Assembly (NCBI RefSeq): GCF_006345805.1
Contig: NW_021834548.1
Location: 1-47,474, forward strand
Origin: Octopus sinensis
Taxonomy: Eukaryota
Length of the DNA: 47,474 bases
Reading direction: 5' to 3'
Shown piece by piece: positions 13,807 to 44,353 of this stretch (the stretch's first letter is position 1; every line of letters begins with the position of its first letter). The notes under the pieces are model-generated. The model was given only the letters and a program-made list of their open reading frames with translations. It had not been told where the DNA came from and made no database searches. A program made the translations under genes and the position numbers.

Positions 13807-14357
13807 TATTGATAAATAGATAAGTAGGTAGAGATGCATACAGAGGCTTAAATAGATACGTTCATTGAAACAAATTATCACCTTTTGTCACCTTTCAGTA
13901 TATAATACTGTGTATCATTGCCCTAATAAATTTAGATACGTTGACTGCCTTTGTCCGGCCTTCGTACTTATCCAACTCCACATAACTTTTCAATTGACGG
14001 CATTGTGTCTCTCAAGCCGTTTCCCCTCCCCCTTGAACGCTATTTCTTTCTTATTTATGAGCGAGCTGGACAGACAGATGAAAAATTAAGTGCTCTTGAA
14101 CATCCAGAAATTTTACAGAATTAGCAGGGAGAAACAAGTAAGAAACACGGGAAGAACTGGCTGGCTTGTTAGATGAATATAAATAGTATGACTAATAAAC
14201 AAACGATATATTTATATATATATATATGGTACGTACATATATGTTTGTATGTATGCATATATTTTATTTATTACACTATTGTATGACTGAGCGCCTTCGC
14301 GTCGATTCGATTCGATTCGTTTGGTTTGGTTTCGTTTCTTCTTCTTCTTCTCTAAAC

Positions 14358-14414
<57 letters not shown>

Positions 14415-14448
14415 TATATATATATATATTATATATATATATATATAT

Positions 14449-15241
14449 AAATGCCGTATCACTCGAAGCATTCCGTACGAACCATTAGTTCGTCGCCGTG
14501 AAATTGTCAAAGCATGCTCAATATCTCTGTAGCAGACTTCACAAGTTTCACACAAAATTTTCACGTTGGCTCTTTATCCAACTTCTTGTCCATGACAAAA
14601 ATCGCAGACATCATATACGTGATCACGAAAATACAAGTTTCACAACTTGCGAAGTGAACATATGTCACTCAATGCACAGCTTCATGAAGGTCACTACTAG
14701 CTCTCACTGCGCATGCAACTGTGTGCTGTCATCTGTTGGTGCGCTACACAACTAGTCCAGAAACTTTTTGACACTACCTCATATTTCTTCCTCCACCTTT
14801 ACTCTCCTCTTCCTATCTTTATGACTGTTGATGTATCTTTCTAGCCTTCCAGCTAATCTGGGAATATTGTTGGTTAAGCACTAAACTTTTGACACCAACA
14901 AAACTAGTATTGTTTATTGTCTTTCACACTTCTCTATTATGCCCTCCAAATGCATTCACCTGCACAGACACCCACACACACTTTCACCATATATGTATGT
15001 GTGTGTATGTGCGTATGTGTGTTTGTGTATGTGTGTGTCTTTGTGTATTCATGTATATATATATATTATATATATATATATATATTATATATATAATATA
15101 TATATATATAATATATATATATATTATATATATATATAATTATATACATGAATACACAAAGACACACACATACACAAACACACATACGCACATACACACA
15201 CATACATATATGGTGAAAGTGTGTGTGGGTGTCTGTGCAGG

Positions 15242-15285
<44 letters not shown>

Positions 15286-15895
15286 TATACATGAATACAC
15301 AAAGACACACACATACACAAACACACATACGCACATACACACACATACATATATGGTGAAAGTGTGTGTGGGTGTCTGTGCAGGTGAATGCATTTGGAGG
15401 GCATAATAGAGAAGTGTGAAAGACAATAAACAATACTAGTTTTGTTGGTGTCAAAAGTTTAGTGCTTAACCAACAATATTCCCAGATTAGCTGGAAGGCT
15501 AGAAAGATACATCAACAGTCATAAAGATAGGGAAGAGGAGAGTAAAGGTGGAGGAAGAAATATGAGGTAGTGTCAAAAAGTTTCTGGACTAGTTGTGTAG
15601 CGCACCAACAGATGACAGCACACAGTTGCATGCGCAGTGAGAGCTAGTAGTGACCTTCATGAAGCTGTGCATTGAGTGACATATGTTCACTTCGCAAGTT
15701 GTGAAACTTGTATTTTCGTGATCACGTATATGATGTCTGCGATTTTTGTCATGGACAAGAAGTTGGATAAAGAGCCAACGTGAAAATTTTGTGTGAAACT
15801 TGTGAAGTCTGCTACAGAGATATTGAGCATGCTTTGACAATTTCACGGCGACGAACTAATGGTTCGTACGGAATGCTTCGAGTGATACGGCATTT
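14449..15895. repeat. Near-perfect long inverted repeat, arms 14449-15059 and 15284-15895
   Basis: ORFs 14498-14755(+) and 15589-15846(-) translate identically; arm coordinates sum to 30344/30343 (one 1-nt indel). Confidence 0.95.
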
Positions 15896-15982
15896 CAAAA
15901 ACGGAAGAATCTCCTTGGAAGACGTTGAGCAAACTGCAAGACCTGGCACGCGCGTCACCCTGAAAAAGTGGAGAAAATTCTA
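15563..15982 (+). mobile_element. Mariner A, 5' TIR and N-terminal transposase remnant
   Basis: TA|tgaggtagtgtcaaaaagtttctggact; broken MDKKL..ANVKFCVKL..KSATE..FKNGRISLED..EKVEKI. Confidence 0.85.
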
Positions 15983-16331
15983 GCAGGTCCCTTATACACT
16001 CTTCTTAACATCGCGTTCTTCAAAATGGCCTTGATAGTATCCATCAGGAATCACTTCGAAAGGTCATCGAAGCATACGCTAAACCACAATATCTTCAAGA
16101 CTGATTGAGCTGCGGCTCTGTCGTGCCTTCTTCAGTCGGGGAGATGCAAGCCTCTTCTATTGTGACCAACAAAACTGGTATTGTTTATTGTCTTTCACAC
16201 TTCTCTGTTATGCCCTTCAACTGCATTGACCTGCATAGATACCTACCCCACTTTCACCATATATATATATGTGTGTGTATGTGTGTATGTGTGTTTGTGT
16301 GTGTTTTTGTGTATTCATGTATGTATATATA

Positions 16332-16888
16332 TTGGGTTGTCTGGAAAGTTCGTGCCAATTTTTAAAGGTAAGTATAAGGTCAATAAATACTTGCCATTAC
16401 ATTTTTAATCAACCAAATATGAATCATTTTGTTGCACAATGCGTCTCCATCTTTTCTTTAACTTGAAAATACCCTCTTCTCAAAATTGAGGTGGTTTCAT
16501 GGCAAAAAATTCATCTTTTTACGTCATCCAAGGAATTGAAATTTTTACCATTAAGACTATTCTGCAGAGACCTGAATTAGTGGAAATCCGAAGGAGCAAT
16601 ATCTGGGGAATATGGAGGGTGAGGTAACACATCCCAGCCGAACTGCAGCAATTTTTGTCTGGTTCCCAAAGCATTAAGTGCCGAAAATGAACTTTCTTAT
16701 CTTTCATTTTAAAGGGTTACAGAATTAACACAGGTTATAGGAACATAAATCTTCTTCCACGAAAAATAGCTTAAACTGTGCTCTAAATGGAGGTGTAGTC
16801 AAATCCTATTTTATGGACTCAGTCATGATCTAAAATAAGTTGAAATGTAAACTACTATACATCGGCACAAACTTTCCGGACAACCCAA
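16332..16888 (-). mobile_element. Mariner B, internally deleted non-autonomous copy
   Basis: TA|ttgggttgtctggaaagttcgtgccaat ... atcggcacaaactttccggacaacccaa|TA; N-terminal KKVHFRHLMLWE fused to a C-terminal HIPQ/SDFH-region remnant. Confidence 0.9.
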
Positions 16889-16932
16889 TATATACATATA
16901 TATATATCGTTTGTTTATCAGTCATACTATTT

Positions 16933-17653
16933 ACTCATGAGGATCGTCGAAAGACAGTCAACGAAATTGCTGATGAAGTTGGTCTGTCGAATGGGTCTGT
17001 GCTGGCAATCCTAACGTCTGAATTAAACGTGCGGCGTGTCTCTGCAAAGTTTGTGCTCCGTCTCCTGACCACTGAGCAGAAAGAATATCGCGTCGAAGTC
17101 TGTCGTGATCTCCTTCAGCTTGCCTCTGATGACCCATCCTGCATGTCGAGGATCATCACCGGTGACGAGAGTTGGGTCTACGGGTACAATCCTGTGACGA
17201 AGCCGCAAATCGTCACAATTATGAAGAGGCGTTCATCTCCGCGACCGAAGAAGGCACGACAGAGCTGCAGCTCAATCAAAAGCATGCTCATCGATTTGAT
17301 TTTCGACATCCGCAGTATTGTGCATCGAAAATTTGTCCCCCAGGGTCAGACCGTCAATCGAGATTTCTACTGCGACTTTTTGAAACGTTTGAGGTGGAAG
17401 GACGTTCGGTGAAAGCGACCGGATCTTTCGCCGTTTTAACATCGTTGTCGAGATCCAGAGTGAATCGCAGAAGGTTCTCGACTCGCTTACGGAAAACGAC
17501 TTCCAGGTCGGATCCCTAGCGTGGCAGGAACGCTGGTATTGGTATATTGGCGCACAAAGTGACTATTTCGAAGGAGATGATGTTAAAACTTAGGTAAATG
17601 AGTTATCTTTTTTATTAACATAACTAGTTCGGGAACTTTTTGATACCACTTCC
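16933..17653 (+). mobile_element. Mariner A, central/C-terminal transposase remnant and 3' TIR
   Basis: HEDRR..VSAKFV..IITGDESWVYGY..FVPQGQTVN..YFEGD; 3' TIR matches the 15563 TIR at 21 of 28 positions, followed by TA. Confidence 0.9.
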
Positions 17654-17717
17654 TAGTTTATACATACATACATACATACATACATACATACATACATACA
17701 TACATACATACATACAT

Positions 17718-18138
17718 AGGCGTAGGAGTGGCTGTGTGGTAAGTAGCTTGTTTACCAACCACATGGTTCCAGGTTCAGTCCCACTGCGTAGCACCTTGGG
17801 CAAGTGTCTTCTACTATAGCCTCGGGTCGACCAAAGCCTTGTGAGTGAATTTGGTAGACGGAAACTGAAAGAAGCCCGTGGTATATATGTATATATATAT
17901 GTGTGTGTGTATGTTTGTGTGTCTATGTTTGCCCACCCCCAACATCGCTTGACAACCGATGCTGGTGTGTTTACGTCACAGTGACTTAGCGGTTCCGCAA
18001 AAGCGACCGATAGAATAAGTACTAGGCTTACAAAGCATAAGTCCTGGGGGTCGATTTGCTCGACTAAAGGCGGTGCTCCAGCATGGCTACAGTCAAATGA
18101 CTGAAATAAGTAAAATAGTAAAATAGTAGTAAATAGTA
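17718..18138 (+). mobile_element. SINE family A, full length, between (CATA)n tracts
   Basis: Complete head, internal tract and tail. Confidence 0.9.
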
Positions 18139-18158
18139 TACATACATACATACATACA

Positions 18159-18192
<34 letters not shown>

Positions 18193-18888
18193 CATACATA
18201 TATGCTTCGATGATTTTCCGAAGTGATTCCTGATGGATACTACTAACGCCTTGATGGATACTAATAAGGCCTTTTTGAAGAACGCGATGTTAAGAAGAGT
18301 GTATAAGGGACCTGCCAGAACTCTGTTCCATGACGTTTATCAACGTGTAAAAGTTGATGTGTGTAAGAGTTGCTGGCGTGTAATTCAGTTTATTTATAAA
18401 GTATACAAAAGTGCGAACTTTTAACAGGGCTCGTGCACCTGACTGTAGAAAGTTTGCCGAGGATTTGCAGCTCTTTTGTTGCTAAAAGAATTATACAGCA
18501 ACAATAGAATTTGCTTTTAATGCAAGTGTTGTCCTAAAGTGTTAGAGTTACTTTCGGCTGTTTACGATTCGTTCTTTCTTATCTTATTTCTTTGTTACTA
18601 TTTTTCTTTTTTTACATATTCTTCCTGGTACATGTTCAAACTTCATTCTCTCATCTATCGCTGTCTACTACACGAAAACCCCAAAGTCATGCTGTGCCGA
18701 ATTCCACGACATGCTGAATATATCGCATATAGACGTACTTATATCACAAAGTAAGGATTTTAACAGTTCTAGTGTCTTTGTGATGCATTTCAAACAACAA
18801 ATTAGTACCGACTGTCTTTCATACAGTGAAATAACCTGAAACACCCAAAACAGACATGACTGAGAAGTTAAGGTGCCCTAACTGTGTA

Positions 18889-19448
<560 letters not shown>

Positions 19449-20849
19449 GTGTATGTTAATGATGACTAGGAAATTCTTATTTTTATTGCCGAATTTTATC
19501 ATTAAATACTCAGGATTTTCTTGAATTGTCGGAACTAGAACAGATTTAGAAAGTACATCTGTCCATGAGTTACCGTTGTGTAGAAAAGGGCTAAGAGCAG
19601 AAATGTGAGTTTCTTGGAGTTTAGTGTTGACAGAGAGGCACAAAGGTCACTGAAAATTTACTAGGAAAAAAGATGGCTATGTTGCGGTATTGTCAATGTG
19701 TTTGGTCAATTTTATATTAAGACATCATCCGTACACGCTGTAGACTCTAGATATTTTAGATACTGATTCAAGGTTGTGTTCGTCTGTAGAAACATGAATG
19801 TAACGAGGTATTATGCTGCTGACGAACATCCCATGATGATAACCGTTATGGGGCCAATGGTTCGACTATAACTGCTGATAATTCTCAAGAAATTTTTCTC
19901 GGAGAAGCGGTTAATACACTATAGTTAAGGATTCTCTCTGGCAAGACCATGTTAAATCTCTTGTTAATTTCAACAGAATTTCTCATCACTCATTATGAGA
20001 AGAAATATGCAACCCTCTAACGACCAGAAGATAAGTAATGAGAGAAGAGGTTTATTCTAACAACACGTTGCAATCACTAGCCGATGGCCACACTGTATGA
20101 ATTGCTTCAAATCTCTTCTATTGTTACTTCTACAGCGACTTCCACTTGGTTGATACGATATAGATACGCACCACACACGCAAGTTCATCTGGCGCATTTG
20201 ATTTTTCGTTTCTATTTTCCTTTCAAGAATTGTGATCCGTCAGAATCGACTCTCTTCTCAAGTTTATCCTTGATCCATCAATCTACAGAAATTCAATATG
20301 AATGCCAACTACATTAACCTAAGTAATCCATTGACTAAATCGCGATAACGAGAAAGGAAGATGTCAGAACGTGAAAGAGCAAGAACGCAACCATGTTTTA
20401 TAGACTTCTGAAGATGAGTAATCTAAATGGCTCGTAATCCTATGTGGCAGCTAGATTATTAATTTAGAAAGGCTAAGTAAGAACATTTGTTTTCTCTATC
20501 TCTAAATATTATACGAATATTGAACAGAATACTAACCCAAACTAAACAAAGCAATAAAGAAATAATTCAAATTGCCAATATCCATTTAAGCCAACAAAGA
20601 AAACTCTACGGAATCTCTTGAACTAGTAGAAAAAACAAAACAAAGTAAAAAATAGATTCATTTTCATTATATCATACCCCACCATCTCAAAAACAGTTGG
20701 TAAAACGTAGTTTTAATGTTGATCTAGACATGGTGTGTCTGAAGAAGAAATAAAAAAAGAAGACAATGGAGTTACGACTTGAATGTTTCTGGTCACAATT
20801 ACTAAGTGACAACAATTACTAAGTGACAACATTAGCAAAACTCTGTGAA

Positions 20850-22159: not shown

Positions 22160-22532
22160 TCTGTGTGAAAAGTCTGGCTGCATACACGTTAGCATATGTT
22201 AGGTGCATACAATTGACAACACAGTTAATTAAGATTTATTCAGTGAGTTCTATTCAACACATGTTTACACGTGGAATTAGCAGAATCATTATTAACTTTA
22301 GATGTCTCGCAGGCGAGGTGAACAAATTAGTGAGAGAGATAGACTGGCAATACTTGCAGTCTTGGGAAGAGCTATCTGAGCGGAAAATTCGTGGATGTAT
22401 TCAACATCAAACTCGTGTTCGGTGTCATGTAGTTGACTGTCGTGGTGGTAACAGATTCGTGTAATAAATTTTGAGTTTACTTTTGTTTCATAATATATAG
22501 TTTTTCGGATGCAGCCAGACTTTTCACACAGA
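22160..22532 (+). mobile_element. Tc1-like MITE / deletion derivative
   Basis: Perfect 24-bp TIR tctgtgtgaaaagtctggctgcat; internal WEELSERKIRGCI..HVVDCRGG resembles a Tc1 C-terminus. Confidence 0.75.
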
Positions 22533-22540
22533 TATCGTAG

Positions 22541-22927
22541 GTATGACTTTTTGATAAGAAGCTTGCTTCTAAACTACGTAGTTGCAGGTTCAGTCCCACT
22601 GCGTGGTACATGGGGGCAAGTGTCTTCTGCTGTAGCCCCAAGCCTTTTGAGTGGACTAAGTAGGCGGAAACTGAAAGAAGCCCGTAGTATATACAATATA
22701 TATATATATGTCTATGCTTAAGTGCTTTTGTGCTTATGTTTTTCCCCTCCACCGATTGACAATTGGTGTTTGTTTACGTTCTCGTAACTTAGCGGTCCGG
22801 CAGAAAGAACCGCTAGGATAAGTACCAGGCTTAAAAATAAGTACTAGGAGTGATCTGCTTTGCTAAAACCTTCAAGGCGGTGCCCCAGAACGGCTGTAGT
22901 CCAATGACTGAAAGAAGTAAAAGAGAA
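22541..22927 (+). mobile_element. SINE family A, diverged subfamily
   Basis: Head, internal TA tract and tail gactgaaagaagtaaaag. Confidence 0.8.
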
Positions 22928-23911
22928 ACGATATATATTATATATAAAAGTTATATTATGCATTTACACTCTATGCATGTGCCTGGCGTTCAAAGCCAAA
23001 CATGAGGCAAGAAAACTGGCACGAATCAAATTCTGCCCCGAGGCTGGCGTTGCAGCATTAAGGAAGAAAGAAAACAAGGATCATAGTTACAGATAATAAT
23101 ACTAACGTGGAAACAGGAAGTTCTGAGTAGGAGATGGATCCTAGAGAAAAGATGGAAACTGTTGGAGACGTTAGGAAGGGCAAGTTAGAGCTTAGTAAAA
23201 ATACAGTACTCAAATTAAATGCATGTAAGTTGGAAGGGTACCCGTGCATTACGGCTGTGCAAATCTGATACGAGAATCTGATGGTGCTGATGAACGATCT
23301 GTTGGCCAGGAGAAATACTTCCCTTCTTGACGAGGGAATGGAATAAAGAACAAAAGTACAAAGAGAAAGTTCAATAATAAAATAAATACCTTAGAAGAAA
23401 GATACTGCAGCAAGAAAAACAACCGAAATTCATCTGGAATGCGTTGAAAGCAATGTACTTGTAATGTTATATTGTCAAACATTGATACTAGCTGAACAAA
23501 TGAAAAGTAAACAGACGAAGTAGTTAGAGGTTTGATGAAAATATCAAGAGCTGGTATTTATAGTCGAATCTTGAACAGATCGATAGCTAGATGAATAAGT
23601 AGGCGTAGAGCTAACTAGCTAGCTTGATAAATAGATATATGAATAAATAGAAAGTTAGCTTCCACAGAATAATTGTCAGCTCAGCTAAATAGATAAATAG
23701 ACGGCTTGATAGATTGATAAATAAATAAAAGAGAAAAGACTGAAACACACACGCATGTGTGTGTGTGTGTGTGTACAAATCGTTATAAAGTTATAATTTA
23801 ATGCCGTTTCAATTGTGTTCACCGAGTTTATTTTAACAATCTAAGCTTCCTGCTATATCAGTGAGTGTATTATTTATTAATTTCACTATAAATCGGATGT
23901 GACAAATTGTA

Positions 23912-25157
23912 TTAGGTTGACCCCGAAAATAATGGCCGATTTCAGAAACATAATTTTATTCTGGAAAAATTAACAATAGAAATGTTTTGATTAGTCAAAG
24001 TATGAGCTGTGAACATCTATACATCGATCAACGAGATTATTTATGCCTCATTAAAAAAAAAAAAAAAAAACCTATTGGCTCTGATGCTAAGAAATCTTTG
24101 AAAGCTGATTCCACCTCTGGTTTGGACCTGAAAGTTTTATCACTTAAAAACGTGTTTAAATGCTTGAAAAATGGTAGTCAGTGGGTGAAAGATCAGGAGA
24201 ATATGGAGGATGTGGTAAAGTCTCGTATCCCAAGTCTGTGAGTTTCTGCAGCGTCATTCTTGCAACATGTGGCTTTGTATTTTCATGGAGCAGAATTGGG
24301 CCAAGCCGATTCACCAAGTGAGCATGTATTTCAGCGAGTGATTGCAGTAAACCTCTGCTGTAATGCTCCGATTGGATTCCAGAAAGCTATAATGGGCAAC
24401 ACCAATTGCAGACTCTAGACAGCCACCATAATCTTTTGTTGATGCAATTTTGGTTTTGGGAAATGTTTGGGGGACTCATCACGATCAAGCCATTGACCTG
24501 ATCGTTTACGATCATCATAAAGGGTACATTTTTCGCCACAAGTGACTATTCTGTCAAGAAAAGGATCATTAGTGTTTCGTAGAAAGATCATCGAGCACAC
24601 TTCAAAATGCCAAACTTTTGATTTTCATTGAGCTCATGCAGTACCCATTTATCGAGATTTTTCACCTTACCAATCTTCTTCAGATTGCCTGAGACCGTTG
24701 CAATATCGACACCAAGTGCCTGAGACATTTCCCTACCACTTTGACGTGGGTTTTGTTCAACAATTGCTTTCAATTATTCATTGTCAAGTTTGCATGACTG
24801 TCCTCTACCTTCTTCATCTTCAAGGCTCTCATCACCACTATGGAATTTCTGAAACCACCTTCCTACTGGGCGATCACTTGTGGACCCCTCTCCCTATGCT
24901 CTGCTGATATTAGCAGCAGCTTAGGAGGTTTGAACTCATGAAAGAAAAGTAAGCGAAGATCCTTTTTTTGTCATGTTCATAATTAAGGGCGCCTATGCTT
25001 CAAGAATGTTTTCTGTCTGAAATAAGTAGAAAATTATTAAATAGCATACATCAACTAAGTATGTCGAAATTCACCTAAAATATAATTAAAATACTATGAT
25101 AAAATTGCATTTCAAAACACAACCCTTGGAGCGGTCATTATTTTTGGAACAACCTAA
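23912..25157 (-). mobile_element. Near full-length decayed mariner (Hsmar1/cecropia-like)
   Basis: TA|ttaggttgaccccgaaaataatggcc ... ggtcattatttttggaacaacctaa|TA; KWVLHEL, FLDRIVTCGEK, HENTKPH and YSPDLSPTDY motifs on minus strand. Confidence 0.92.
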
Positions 25158-25244: not shown

Positions 25245-27077
25245 TGTAAGAAATGACTGCGGCATCACTTTGTTGGAGTCTATGGGCAAAGTTCTTGCTA
25301 GATTATTGTTGAACAGGTTGATGGAGGACATTTGTCCTACTGTAGTCGCTGATCACAAAATGGCTTTAGATAAGGCAGTGGGACCATTGATAGGATCTCA
25401 GCAAGGCAGATTCAGTAGAAATGTATTGAGCAGCGAGTTCCTCTGTATCAGGTCTTTGTTGATCTGACAAAGGCCTTTGATACGGTGAACAGAGATGCAC
25501 TGTGGAAATTATTAGGGAAAATAGGGTGCCCGTCAAAGTTTATTGATATGTTCGTTCGATTGCACAGAAATATGAAGGCTCGGGTTGTTTTGAATGGAAA
25601 ATTGTCCAATGAAATCCCAGTTGATAATAGCGTGAAACAGGGACTATCCTCGTTCCCACACTGTTTGCAATATTTTTAGCTGTGATGCTGACTCATGCAT
25701 TCCATGACTGTGCAAATTAGAACTACAGGAAGGATTTTTGACCAAATATTAATTAGAGAACTCTTATATGCAGACGATGTTGACTTCTTGGCTCATTCTC
25801 AGAATGACATGCAACGCATCATGGATTGCTTTGCAACATCTTGTAATGCCTTTGGCTATTATCAACTGGGATTTCATTGGACAATTTTCCATTCAAGACA
25901 ACCCGAGCCTTCATACTTCTGTGCAATCGAACGAACATACCAAGGTAATGTTCACCCCATCATCAGGGTAAGCATATATCAAGCCAAATATAATGGTGCT
26001 TGGAACTAGGTTGGGTGTAGTTAACACTTTTGCTTACTTGGGGAGTACATTATCAAGGGATGGTTCACTGGATGCTGAAATACACCTGCGTAGTCAGAAG
26101 GCTCCTGTAACCTTTGGAAAACTCGAAAAGAGAGTGTGGGCAGATCATGGCATCAATATCAAGACCAAGATTAGTGTGTACAAGGCCTGCATTCTAAGTA
26201 CTCTGTTGTACTCTTCAAAAACGTTGACGGTACATCGTAAGCGCCTTAATTTGATCGAACACTTTAACCAAAAAGTGTTTAAGAAGAATCCTAAACATCA
26301 AATGGCAACAGAAATTACCTGACACACAAATCCTTATAGATGCTGGCTGCAGGATCATTGAATCTACCATCATATCTTCTCAAATGCGATGGGTAGGCCC
26401 TGTTGTGCGCATGAATGTGGTAAGACTCTCAAAACAATTAGTTTACAGTCAATTTCACACTGGGAAACGCCCTCAGCACAAACCAAGAAAAAGATATAAA
26501 GATTGCATAACAAACAACCTTATAGATTTTCAGCTTGAAGATCAGAACTGGGAAGTGATTGCTTCAAAGAAGGGTAAATGGAGAAGATATATGAAGGAAG
26601 GCTACAGGATGTTTGAAGGGAGACGTCTTGATCATGAAAAACTTAAACACCAGCTTCGAAAAGTGCTACAGTATGCAAATCATTAAGAACATAGTGAGGT
26701 GGATTTGTGAGGTGTGTGATCGTTTATTGGTCTCTAAATTTGGGTATATCACTCATTTAAAATCACATAAAAAACCAGCTCTATCGCTCCAATGCTAGGT
26801 GAGACCACGTGTGTGGTGTGCAAAAATATCTGCAAATCAATATCTGGTCTTAAAAGGCATATGAGGGTACATAAGGATGACATCCCACAAGCTGACCTAA
26901 TAAATCCAGTAGAAGGTACATCTTTTATCTGTCATATTTGCGGCAGACCGAGCAAATCTAATGGTGGACTCAAAAGCTACCTAAGGGTTCATGGACGGAA
27001 GTTTGGAGCTGATGATGGTTGATGGGGATACATGGGGAGACAGCAATCATCTTCAAAGATGAAGCAGTCATCATCAT
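25245..27077 (+). mobile_element. 5'-truncated RTE-clade LINE (RT plus C-terminal zinc fingers), pseudogenised
   Basis: GITLL..GKVLARLLLNRL, DLTKAFDTVNR, VKQG, LLYADD, YLGS, KTKISVY..LLY, RWVGPVVRM; 3' end gaagcagtcatcatcat. Confidence 0.92.
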
Positions 27078-36022: not shown

Positions 36023-36090
<68 letters not shown>

Positions 36091-36097
36091 ATATATC

Positions 36098-36128
<31 letters not shown>

Positions 36129-36136
36129 TATATATA
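35940..36136. repeat. Long (TA)n microsatellite
   Basis: Direct reading. Confidence 0.95.
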
Positions 36137-36299
36137 CGAGTAGGAGTGGCTGTGTGGTGAGTAGCTTGCTTACCAACCACATGGTTCCGGGTTCAGTCGA
36201 ACTGCATGGCACCTTGGGCAAGTGTCTCTTACTATAGCCTCGGGCCGACCAAAGCCTTGTGAGTGGATTTGGTAGACGGAAACTGAAAGAAACCCTTCA

Positions 36300-36357
<58 letters not shown>

Positions 36358-36585
36358 GTGTGTGTATGCTTGGATATGTGTGTGTGTGTTTGTTGCACCC
36401 CCCCCCCCAATATTGCTTGACAACCGATACTGGTATGTTTACGTCCTCGAAATTTAGTGGTTCAGCAAAAGAGACCGATAAAATAGGTACTAGACTTACA
36501 AAGATTTAGTCCTGGCGTCGATTTGCTTAACTAAAAGGGATGCTCCAGCATGGCCACAGTAAAACAAGTAAAAGAATAAAAGAAT
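36137..36585 (+). mobile_element. SINE family A, full length
   Basis: Head to (gaataaaa)n tail. Confidence 0.9.
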
Positions 36586-36593
36586 ATATATAT

Positions 36594-36816
36594 TATTCTT
36601 TCTTTCAGTCATGTGACTGCAGCCATGCTGGAGCACCACTTTTAATTAAGCAAATCGACCCCAGGACTAATTCTTTGTAAGTCTGGTACTTATACTATCG
36701 GTCTCTTTTGATGAAACACACCAACATCTGTTCTCAAGTGAGGGTGGGAGGACAAACGCAGGTACACACACATACACATACACATACATAAACACATACA
36801 TACACACACACACACA

Positions 36817-38511: not shown

Positions 38512-38945
38512 AGCTAAAGGAGTGGCTCTGTGGTAAGTAGCTTGCTTACGAACCACATGGTTCCTGGTTCAGTCCCACTATGTGGCACCTTGGGCAAGTG
38601 TCTTCTACTATAGCCTCGGACCGACCACAGCCTTGTGAGTGGATTTGGTAGTCGGAAACTGAAAGAAGTTCGTCGTATATATGTATATATATATATATGT
38701 ATGTGTGTGTATGTGTTTGTGTGTCTGTGTTTGTCCCCCCACCCAACATCGCTTGACAACCAATGCTGGTATGTTTACATCTCCGTAACTTAGAGGTTCG
38801 GCAAAAGAGACCGATAGAATCAGTGCTAGGCTTACAAAGCATAAGTCTTGGGGGTCGATTTGGTCGACTAAAAGCGGTGCTCCAGCATGGCCACAGTCTC
38901 ATGACTGAAACAAGAAAAAGAATAAAAGAATAAAAGAATAAAAGT
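38512..38945 (+). mobile_element. SINE family A, full length
   Basis: Head to (gaataaaa)3 tail. Confidence 0.9.
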
Positions 38946-43640: not shown

Positions 43641-44084
43641 ATACTCTTTTACTCTTTTACTTGTTTCAGTCATTTGTCTGTGGCCATGCTGGAGCACCGC
43701 CTTTACTCGATCGAGCAAATCGACCCCAGGATTTATTCTTTGTAAGCCTAGTACTTATTCTATCGGTCTCTTTTGCCGAACCGCTAGATGACGGGGTCGT
43801 AAACACACCAGCATCGGTTTTCAAGCGATGTTGGGGGGACAAACACAGACACACAAACATACATACGTACGCCCACACACACACGCACGCACACACACAC
43901 ACATACATATACATATATACGACGGGCTTCTTTCAGTTTCCCATCTACTAAATCCACTCACAAGGCTTTGGTCGGCCCGAGGCTATAGAAGAAGACACTT
44001 GCCCAAGGTGTCACGCAGTGGGACTGAACCCGAAACCATATGGTTCGTAAGCAAGCTACTTACCACACAGCCACTCCTACGCCT
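43641..44084 (-). mobile_element. SINE family A, full length
   Basis: (tactcttt)n tail to cctacgcct head end. Confidence 0.9.
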
Positions 44085-44353
44085 ATTAACGTTTGATACT
44101 CACAAGTTCACTTCAAAATAATATTGAGCTCTCTCACAATTTTTTTTTCTTTTCACACAGTGGTGAACATTATAGTGAACACCGGCATACGCGCTTGCCT
44201 ACGCACACACAAACACATAGAAACACAGATAAATACACTCATATAGATACACACACTTAATCTATGCGTGTACAGTGACTACTAATTGAGATGCCTGAAT
44301 ATTTTGCTCCATAAATTGTACTATTTTCATATGCATCTCTTTAATAATTTTCT

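What the first reader, a model, noticed from the sequence alone, without database searches (positions are those of the whole stretch)
15983..16331. An inverted, condensed miniature of its own 3-kb locus inserted in the middle of it
Read on the minus strand, this 350-bp block has four parts: a copy of 15284-15447, a copy of mariner-internal 17212-17278, a 25-bp linker, then a copy of 18201-18315. The three donors lie about 1.8 kb and 0.9 kb apart and appear in their genomic order. The block sits at the point where mariner A is broken (EKVEKI | HEDRR). The copies are visibly diverged, so this is old and not an assembly echo. The junctions lack AG acceptors, which argues against a spliced retrocopy. 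Serial template switching (FoSTeS/MMBIR-like repair), or an inverted duplication later pruned by deletions, would both fit.
Basis: partly seen in the sequence, partly recalled or inferred. Interest (0 to 1): 0.7.

Follow-up and report, generated by a model that had tools for sequence, protein, structure and literature searches.

The report
Inverted repair scar inside dead mariner
A dead mariner transposon is interrupted by a small, old, upside-down and shortened copy of its own neighbourhood, most likely a scar of faulty DNA-break or replication repair; it is a neat example of a known kind of rearrangement, with no sign of a function.

Summary
On the minus strand, 15980-16331 is made of copies of 15278-15449 (A), mariner-internal 17212-17278 (B), 25 nt of unknown origin, and 18201-18320 (C). 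BLAST E-values against the window are 1e-15 to 1e-48.

It runs to 16933. After a later nested mariner-type MITE (16332-16888, TA duplication) comes a fourth collinear piece, Z' (16889-16933), a copy of 14180-14224. So the insert is a condensed reverse complement of Z-A-B-C.

- The four copies are evenly diverged from their donors (5-10%, pooled 7.5%, homogeneity p=0.75). This fits one old event.
- The insert has no terminal inverted repeats, target-site duplication, poly(A) or splice signals.
- About 9 bp (three codons) of the mariner are missing at the break.
- Two junctions show 2-nt microhomology.

The best reading is a local inverted templated insertion from break or replication repair. 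It formed either by serial template switching or by a full inverted duplication later pruned by deletions. I cannot separate the two.

Next to the insert lies a near-perfect palindrome (14449-15895). It is either very recent or an assembly artefact.

Interest is modest.

The parts
15563..15979 (+). Mariner A, 5' part. TIR from 15563, TA duplication at 15561-62. Degenerate N-terminal coding region ending ...HPEKVEKI.
   Evidence: TIR alignment with the 3' end. tblastn and alignment to Mos1-type transposases.
15980..16076 (-). C': inverted copy of donor C (18201-18320). Bases 15978-79 (TT) are 2-nt microhomology shared with the mariner.
   Evidence: (I25), 3, 13, 30, 34: 5 mismatches in 99 aligned positions. 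It lacks the donor's 21-nt tandem duplication.
16077..16101 (.). 25-nt linker of unknown origin (minus strand GTCTTGAAGATATTGTGGTTTAGCG).
   Evidence: No match above chance in the window or in the collinear interval.
16102..16166 (-). B': inverted copy of mariner-A internal sequence 17212-17278.
   Evidence: 60/65 identical with 2 small indels.
16165..16331 (-). A': inverted copy of donor A (15278-15449). It is also a direct copy of the left palindrome arm, 14886-15065. It overlaps B' by 2 nt (GT microhomology).
   Evidence: (D14, I11), 3, 13, 30, 34: 8-10% mismatches.
16332..16888 (.). Later nested insertion: an internally deleted mariner of another subfamily (MITE-like). 25-nt TIRs (TTGGGTTGTCTGGAAAGTTCGTGCC), TA duplication at 16330-31 and 16889-90.
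   Evidence: TIR alignment. Transposase remnant PHPPYSPDIAPSDFH on the minus strand.
16889..16933 (-). Z': (TA)n plus an inverted copy of donor Z (14180-14224). This is the fourth collinear piece and the true right end of the insert.
   Evidence: 42/45 identical. Homology stops exactly at 14180 and 16933.
16934..17653 (+). Mariner A, 3' part, from (T)HEDRR to the 3' TIR. TA duplication at 17654-55. An internal deletion removes about 62 aa, including the second and third catalytic Asp.
14180..14224 (+). Donor Z.
15278..15449 (+). Donor A, upstream flank of mariner A. It lies in the right arm of the palindrome.
17212..17278 (+). Donor B, inside the mariner A coding region (…KRRSSPRPKKARQSCSSI…).
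18201..18320 (+). Donor C, downstream flank of mariner A. It is now separated from the mariner by (ACAT)n, a SINE-like repeat and (ACAT)n. It carries a 21-nt tandem duplication (18231-18272) that C' lacks.
14449..15895 (.). Neighbouring near-perfect palindrome. Arms 14449-15066 and 15277-15895, centre of (TA)n plus a 143-bp tandem duplication. It contains donor A and the first 333 bp of mariner A.
   Evidence: (I1, I2), 4, 23, 37: the arms differ by a single homopolymer indel and no substitutions.

Best explanation
The block is most of a roughly 395-bp insertion (954 bp with a later nested MITE) at 15980-16933. It interrupts a dead Mos1-type mariner.

Read on the minus strand, the insertion is a collinear, shortened copy of the DNA around it: Z (14180-14224), (TA)n, A (15278-15449), B (17212-17278, inside the same mariner), 25 nt of unknown origin, and C (18201-18320).

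I read it as a scar of one old repair or replication accident:
1. A break or stalled 3' end formed inside the mariner, after codon ...KI.
2. The end primed on the same-sense strand about 1.4 kb downstream, at a 2-nt TT/AA microhomology just beyond C.
3. It copied back through the locus in inverted orientation, then rejoined the mariner with loss of about 9 bp.

The condensation arose in one of two ways. Either the polymerase skipped forward along the template three or four times during that event (MMBIR/FoSTeS-type template switching; GT microhomology at the A/B joint). Or a roughly 1.9-kb full inverted copy was made and most of it was later deleted, as long inverted repeats tend to be.

Shown: composition, order, orientation, even divergence, absence of transposon and retrocopy hallmarks, and the target-site loss.
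Inferred: the break, the priming step, and which of the two routes produced the shortening.

No function is implied.
For: - Four collinear inverted segments have highly significant matches only to local donors.
- Divergence is homogeneous: Z 6.7%, A 7.9 and 10.3%, B 7.7%, C 5.1%; chi-square p=0.75; pooled 7.5%, JC 0.079. This fits a single event.
- B' is a piece of the very mariner that is interrupted, and it sits in its collinear place between the copies of the mariner's two flanks. So the template was this locus, or a duplicate of it, after the mariner had inserted.
- Homology to the donors stops sharply at 14180 and 18320. The flanks beyond them show nothing above shuffled controls.
- There is 2-nt microhomology at the left junction (TT) and at the A/B joint (GT).
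- The alignment to six intact relatives shows I-R-x-L-x-HEDRR where mariner A has I | insert | T-HEDRR. About three codons are lost and no target duplication exists.
- An inverted copy of a nearby template, flanked by microhomology and sometimes using several templates, is the published MMBIR templated-insertion signature (PMC8421209).
Against: - Two-nucleotide microhomologies are weak evidence. About 13% of random junctions reach 2 bp or more in the simulation of PMC3907307.
- One internal joint carries 25 nt that I could not template anywhere.
- The right junction cannot be scored for microhomology because the lost mariner bases are unknown.
- Templates lie 0.5-2.3 kb away today, farther than the 100 bp of the yeast-derived signature.
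- The decisive copy-number test across the genome was not possible. Both collection scans and protein look-ups were empty, but the window's own ORFs are not in those collections.
Confidence: 0.7

Rival explanations
1. The insert is a transposed, internally deleted copy of a larger mobile element U (about 14180-18320) that had earlier acquired mariner A. That element jumped, inverted, into its own parent.
For: - The insert keeps both outer ends of U (Z and C) and loses the interior, as deletion derivatives of DNA transposons do.
- Homology ends sharply at both donor boundaries.
- Local reinsertion of DNA transposons is well known (my knowledge).
Against: - The ends CTAGCAGGTCCC... and ...GTCATACTATTTA are not inverted repeats.
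- There is no target-site duplication. About 9 bp of target are lost instead.
- No Helitron ends: no 5' TC, the donor 3' end is CCAG rather than CTRR, and there is no 3' hairpin.
- No other copy of Z, A or C exists in 47 kb of very repeat-rich sequence.
Confidence: 0.1
2. Same origin as the best explanation, but the shortening matters. The locus carried a full-length inverted duplication that is still being eroded, and the neighbouring perfect palindrome is a second, recent product of the same fragile (TA)n-rich site. That would make this a recurrent fold-back hotspot.
For: - The palindrome 14449-15895 has arms differing by one indel, is centred on (TA)n, and has its outer joint in (AT)n.
- Both rearrangements include segment A.
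- Fold-back with 2-8 bp microhomology and a spacer is a documented route to inverted duplications (PMC3907307).
Against: - Arms with zero substitutions and a single homopolymer-length difference are also what a chimeric long read or an assembly error gives.
- The old insert is not adjacent to its templates, as a classical fold-back product would be.
- (TA)n is not one of its breakpoints.
Confidence: 0.12
3. The insert is a retrocopy of a spliced or otherwise processed transcript of the locus.
For: Collinear segments with the intervening DNA removed resemble exon joining.
Against: - There is no GT...AG (or CT...AC) at any of the donor boundaries on either strand.
- There is no poly(A) or poly(T) at either end and no target duplication.
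- A 25-nt untemplated linker is present (read directly from the sequence).
Confidence: 0.02
4. The block is an assembly or sequencing artefact, or a chance resemblance between unrelated repeats.
For: The adjacent palindrome shows that the assembly may be unreliable here.
Against: - Copies are 5-10% diverged, with indels.
- The insert carries its own later MITE with a TA duplication.
- The donor C has since gained a 21-nt tandem duplication.
- E-values are 1e-15 to 1e-48 in a 47-kb search space.
Confidence: 0.03

Closest known systems
MMBIR/FoSTeS templated insertions (MMB-TI signature; Osia et al. 2021, PMC8421209)
   Same: The insertion is an inverted copy of nearby sequence. There are short microhomologies at junctions, more than one template segment, and a small loss at the recipient site.
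   Different: - It is larger (about 395 bp) and its templates are farther away (0.5-2.3 kb now) than the short events with templates within 100 bp used to define the signature.
- Its four segments are strictly collinear, which later deletions explain equally well.
- One joint has 25 unexplained bases.
- It is an old germline relic, not a somatic event.
Fold-back inverted duplications (Hermetz et al. 2014, PMC3907307)
   Same: Both are inverted duplication of local DNA initiated at a break, with 2-nt inverted microhomology at the start of the copy.
   Different: - Classical fold-back gives a copy contiguous with its template across a single-copy spacer, and it extends outward.
- Here the copy is inserted within the template region and draws on both sides of the break.
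- The neighbouring palindrome 14449-15895 fits the fold-back layout. The old insert does not.
Self-insertion and deletion derivatives of DNA transposons (for example maize double Ds; my knowledge, not checked here)
   Same: An inverted, shortened copy sits inside its parent element, with ends retained and interior lost.
   Different: - The copy includes DNA from both flanks outside the mariner's own TIRs.
- It has no TIRs or target duplication of its own.
- It retains only 65 bp of the mariner.
Mu killer of maize, a natural inverted partial duplication of MuDR that makes a silencing hairpin RNA (my knowledge, not checked here)
   Same: An inverted duplicate of part of a transposon plus flanking DNA could fold into long double-stranded RNA if transcribed. 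Predicted duplex energies are -112 kcal/mol for B'/B, -158 for C'/C and -253 for A/A'.
   Different: - There is no evidence of transcription or small RNAs.
- Only 65 bp of mariner sequence is duplicated.
- The host mariner is itself dead.

Membership tests
MMBIR/FoSTeS-type templated insertion | The insertion is a reverse-complement copy of nearby sequence. | tested here: met
   All four identifiable segments match local donors in inverted orientation.
MMBIR/FoSTeS-type templated insertion | Microhomology at the switch junctions. | tested here: inconclusive
   There is 2 nt at the left junction (TT) and 2 nt at the A/B joint (GT). The B/C joint holds 25 unexplained nt. The right junction cannot be scored. 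Two nucleotides is near chance level.
MMBIR/FoSTeS-type templated insertion | Template close to the insertion (within 100 bp in the yeast-derived signature). | tested here: not met
   Donors lie about 0.5 to 2.3 kb from the insert. This is compatible only with the looser 'human-type' features listed in PMC8421209.
MMBIR/FoSTeS-type templated insertion | All switches occurred in one event, not a duplication followed by later deletions. | not testable with these tools
   This needs orthologous loci or population data. Homogeneous divergence fits both histories.
Fold-back inverted duplication | The inverted copy is contiguous with its template and separated only by a single-copy spacer. | tested here: not met
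   The insert lies inside the template region and copies from both sides of the break. The layout is met only by the separate palindrome 14449-15895.
Class II (TIR) transposon or MITE | Terminal inverted repeats at the ends of the inserted unit. | tested here: not met
   The ends CTAGCAGGTCCCTTATAC and (reverse complement) TAAATAGTATGACTGATA are not complementary (sequence).
Class II (TIR) transposon or MITE | Target-site duplication. | tested here: not met
   There is no repeat at ...GAGAAAATT| and |CTCATGAGG. Instead about three codons (R-x-L) of the mariner are missing.
Class II (TIR) transposon or MITE | Multiple dispersed copies with the same internal structure. | not testable with these tools
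   There are none in the 47-kb window. External scans were empty but do not cover this genome.
Helitron | 5' TC, 3' CTRR preceded by a hairpin, insertion between A and T. | tested here: not met
   The minus-strand unit starts TAAATAG. The copy ends CTAG but the donor ends CCAG. There is no 3' hairpin, and the flanks are not A|T (sequence).
Processed retrocopy | Exon joints at GT-AG introns, a poly(A) tail and a target duplication. | tested here: not met
   None of the donor boundaries has GT/AG on either strand. There is no A or T run at either end and no duplication.
Mariner (Tc1/mariner, Mos1-like), the host element only | Transposase homology, TIRs and a TA target duplication. | tested here: met
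   Up to 58-59% identity to the closest intact-length Mos1-type proteins (about 350 aa) carrying PF17906/PF01359. Roughly 35-nt imperfect TIRs and TA at 15561-62 and 17654-55. The copy is dead: stops, frameshifts, and loss of the second and third catalytic Asp.

The most novel reading that the evidence does not exclude
The inverted miniature turns this locus into a natural hairpin-RNA gene. A read-through transcript would pair B' with B (65 bp of mariner coding sequence), C' with C and A with A'. That would yield double-stranded RNA that feeds small-RNA silencing of this mariner family, an animal counterpart of maize Mu killer. A related and likelier variant is that the (TA)n-rich site is a recurrent hotspot that has made inverted duplications twice (the old insert and the perfect palindrome).
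Probability: 0.03. Interest if true: 0.55.

Novelty: new member of a known kind. Interest (0 to 1): 0.3.

Why it matters
If the reading is right, this is a well-preserved germline record of a complex, multi-segment inverted templated insertion. It has datable, evenly diverged pieces and a clear recipient site inside a recognisable reading frame. That makes it a useful worked example for people who study template-switch repair or annotate repeat-rich (apparently cephalopod-like) genomes.

It also warns annotators that such composites can pass for novel repeat families. It opens no new question and shows no sign of function.

The adjacent perfect palindrome matters more in practice. It is either a very young fold-back duplication or an assembly error that should be checked.

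Tried and rejected
1. Origin of the 25-nt linker. Local alignment against the whole window, and against the collinear interval 17279-17660, gave nothing above shuffled controls. The best look-alike, 15464-15487 (18/24, direct orientation), is at chance level.
2. A mirror structure, with mariner fragments flanking Z and C. A gapped alignment hinted at this, but shuffles and tblastn with intact transposases show no such similarity.
3. Other copies elsewhere.
 - Exact scans of metagenome and viral contigs with the conserved cores of C and A gave 0 hits.
 - A composite protein query made of the ORFs across all junctions and donors gave 0 hits.
 - An exact look-up of the 190-aa mariner ORF and of ten window ORFs gave none on record.
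 - Because none of the window ORFs tried is in the collection, these negatives say little.
4. Rfam and tRNA scans of the window found nothing.
5. Organism. A search with the reverse-transcriptase remnant gave only distant hits. The single named one was Octopus bimaculoides at 41% identity. This is suggestive of a cephalopod but not proof. My recollection that the abundant SINE-like repeat is octopus-like is unverified.
6. Spliced retrocopy, Helitron and TIR-element readings were rejected on the hallmarks listed in the membership test.

Full report
**Observation**

I read 14800-18800 and ran repeat finding. I then ran a sensitive self-BLAST of the block against the whole window and of the window against itself. 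Outside the TG/TA-rich simple sequence at 16259-16331, the block matches only four places:
- 14886-15065 on the plus strand and 15457-15278 on the minus strand (86% and 85%). These are the two arms of a local palindrome.
- 17278-17212 (89.6%).
- 18315-18201.

E-values run from 1e-15 to 1e-48.

**The insert is larger than reported**

- Immediately after A' lies a 557-bp element (16332-16888). It has 25-nt terminal inverted repeats and a TA duplication (16330-31 and 16889-90). On the minus strand it keeps the transposase remnant PHPPYSPDIAPSDFH. It is a later, independent insertion of an internally deleted mariner of another subfamily into the (TA)n tract.
- Beyond it, 16889-16933 is the reverse complement of 14180-14224 (42/45 identical).
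- The insert is therefore 15980-16933. On the minus strand it reads Z', (TA)n, A', B', linker, C'. These are copies of 14180-14224, 15278-15449, 17212-17278 and 18201-18320, in genomic order and all inverted.
- Homology ends sharply at 14180 and 18320. A hint that the outer flanks resemble mariner sequence did not survive shuffling controls or tblastn.

**The host element**

- Mariner A spans 15563-17653, with imperfect TIRs and TA duplications.
- Its conceptual translation is up to 58-59% identical to the closest intact-length (about 350 aa) Mos1-type transposases carrying PF17906/PF01359.
- Aligned to six of them, relatives read ...VE.I-R-x-L-x-HEDRR. Mariner A reads ...VEKI, then the insert, then T-HEDRR. 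About three codons (9 bp) are missing at the break and nothing is duplicated.
- The copy is long dead. It has stops and frameshifts in the 5' part and a deletion of about 62 aa that removes the second and third catalytic Asp.

**Age and unity of the event**

| Segment | Mismatches to donor |
|---|---|
| Z | 6.7% |
| A, microsatellite-like half | 7.9% |
| A, unique half | 10.3% |
| B | 7.7% |
| C | 5.1% |

- Homogeneity chi-square gives p=0.75. Pooled divergence is 7.5% (JC 0.079).
- Donor C has since gained a 21-nt tandem duplication that C' lacks.
- A SINE-like repeat with its flanking (ACAT)n tracts now separates mariner A from C.
- The insert has acquired its own MITE.
- All of this points to one old event, not an assembly echo.
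- If the window is from an octopus and the calibration in PMC13282606 (JC 0.09 to consensus is about 25 My) applied, the event would be of the order of 10 My old. The organism is not established. The only named hit was Octopus bimaculoides at 41%.

**Junctions**

- Left junction: ...GAGAAAATT|CTAGCAGG. The TT is shared with the donor (AA at 18319-20).
- A/B joint: A ends ...TTGGT and B starts GTCAC. The copy reads TTGGTCAC, so the shared microhomology is GT.
- B/C joint: 25 nt that I could not template anywhere.
- Right junction: ...CATACTATTTA|CTCATGAGG. It cannot be scored because the lost mariner bases are unknown.
- No donor boundary has GT-AG on either strand, and there is no poly(A).
- The ends of the insert are not inverted repeats. 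The Helitron end rules are not met.

**Interpretation**

B' is a piece of the interrupted mariner itself, and it lies between copies of that mariner's two flanks. So the template was this locus after the mariner had arrived. The insert has no transposon or retrocopy hallmarks and a small target-site loss. It is best read as a templated, inverted insertion made during repair of a break or a stalled replication end.

This is the class described as MMBIR/FoSTeS templated insertions: an inverted copy of a nearby template, microhomology, sometimes several templates (PMC8421209). It is related to fold-back inverted duplication (PMC3907307).

Strict collinearity of four segments can arise in two ways. 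The polymerase may have skipped forward along one template during the event. Or a roughly 1.9-kb inverted copy may have been eroded later; that long inverted repeats are deletion-prone is established knowledge.

I put 0.7 on the repair-scar class. The rivals get:
- About 0.1 on a mobile deletion derivative of a larger element.
- 0.12 on a recurrent fold-back hotspot at this site. This shares the repair origin and differs only in treating the neighbouring palindrome as a real second event.
- A few percent each on a retrocopy and on artefact or chance.

**Limits**

The external searches were all empty:
- Exact DNA scans of metagenome and viral contigs.
- A composite protein query.
- Exact ORF look-ups.

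The window's own ORFs are not in those collections, so these negatives carry little weight.

**Surroundings**

Donor A and the first 333 bp of mariner A lie in the right arm of a palindrome, 14449-15066 against 15277-15895. The arms differ by a single homopolymer indel and no substitutions. The centre is (TA)n plus a 143-bp tandem duplication, and the outer joint falls in an (AT)n tract. This is either a very recent fold-back duplication or a long-read assembly artefact. Either way it is far younger than the insert and does not affect the conclusion. The window is otherwise dense with a roughly 420-bp SINE-like repeat and microsatellites.

**Verdict**

This is a real, tidy, old example of a known kind of complex rearrangement. 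There is no indication of function, and the interest is modest.

Noticed in passing
window 14449-15895: Near-perfect palindrome with arms 14449-15066 and 15277-15895. The arms have zero substitutions and one homopolymer indel at 14812. The centre is (TA)n plus a 143-bp tandem duplication (15100-15389), and the outer joint lies in (AT)n at 14449. It is either a very recent fold-back duplication or a long-read assembly artefact.
   Followed up: partly
window 16332-16888: Internally deleted mariner of a second subfamily (MITE-like), nested in the insert. It has 25-nt TIRs (TTGGGTTGTCTGGAAAGTTCGTGCC) and a TA duplication, and keeps LLQFGWDVLPHPPYSPDIAPSDFH on the minus strand.
   Followed up: partly
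window 18231-18272: A 21-nt tandem duplication (TGATGGATACTAMTAASGCCT, two copies) in donor C that is absent from the inverted copy C'. It arose after the copying event, or was lost from the copy.
   Followed up: yes
window 17707-18203, 18889-19456 and 13 or more other sites (for example 374-843, 22526-22946, 36080-36595, 38518-38932, 43642-44095): An abundant SINE-like repeat of about 420 bp with an internal TG/TA-rich stretch and (ACAT)n tails. Two copies form an inverted pair around 18321-18888. ARAGORN and Rfam report no tRNA or RNA-family match anywhere in the window.
   Followed up: partly
window 17380-17440: Mariner A lacks about 62 aa of the catalytic domain between ...RLRWKDVR/KRPDL and FNIVVEIQSE. 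The gap includes the HDNAP and PYSPDLAP motifs that carry the second and third Asp.
   Followed up: yes
window 23994-24377 (minus strand): A third, distant mariner-type transposase remnant covering the C-terminal half. It is 27-31% identical to the Mos1-type proteins retrieved here.
   Followed up: no
window 25695-26686 (plus strand): Reverse-transcriptase remnant (YADD motif) split over three frames. Hits carry PF00078. The only named hit is an Octopus bimaculoides uncharacterised protein at 41% identity, a weak pointer to a cephalopod source.
   Followed up: partly
window 16077-16101 versus 15464-15487: The unexplained 25-nt linker most resembles a stretch just downstream of donor A (18/24 identical, direct orientation). 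The score equals the best chance matches elsewhere in the window.
   Followed up: yes
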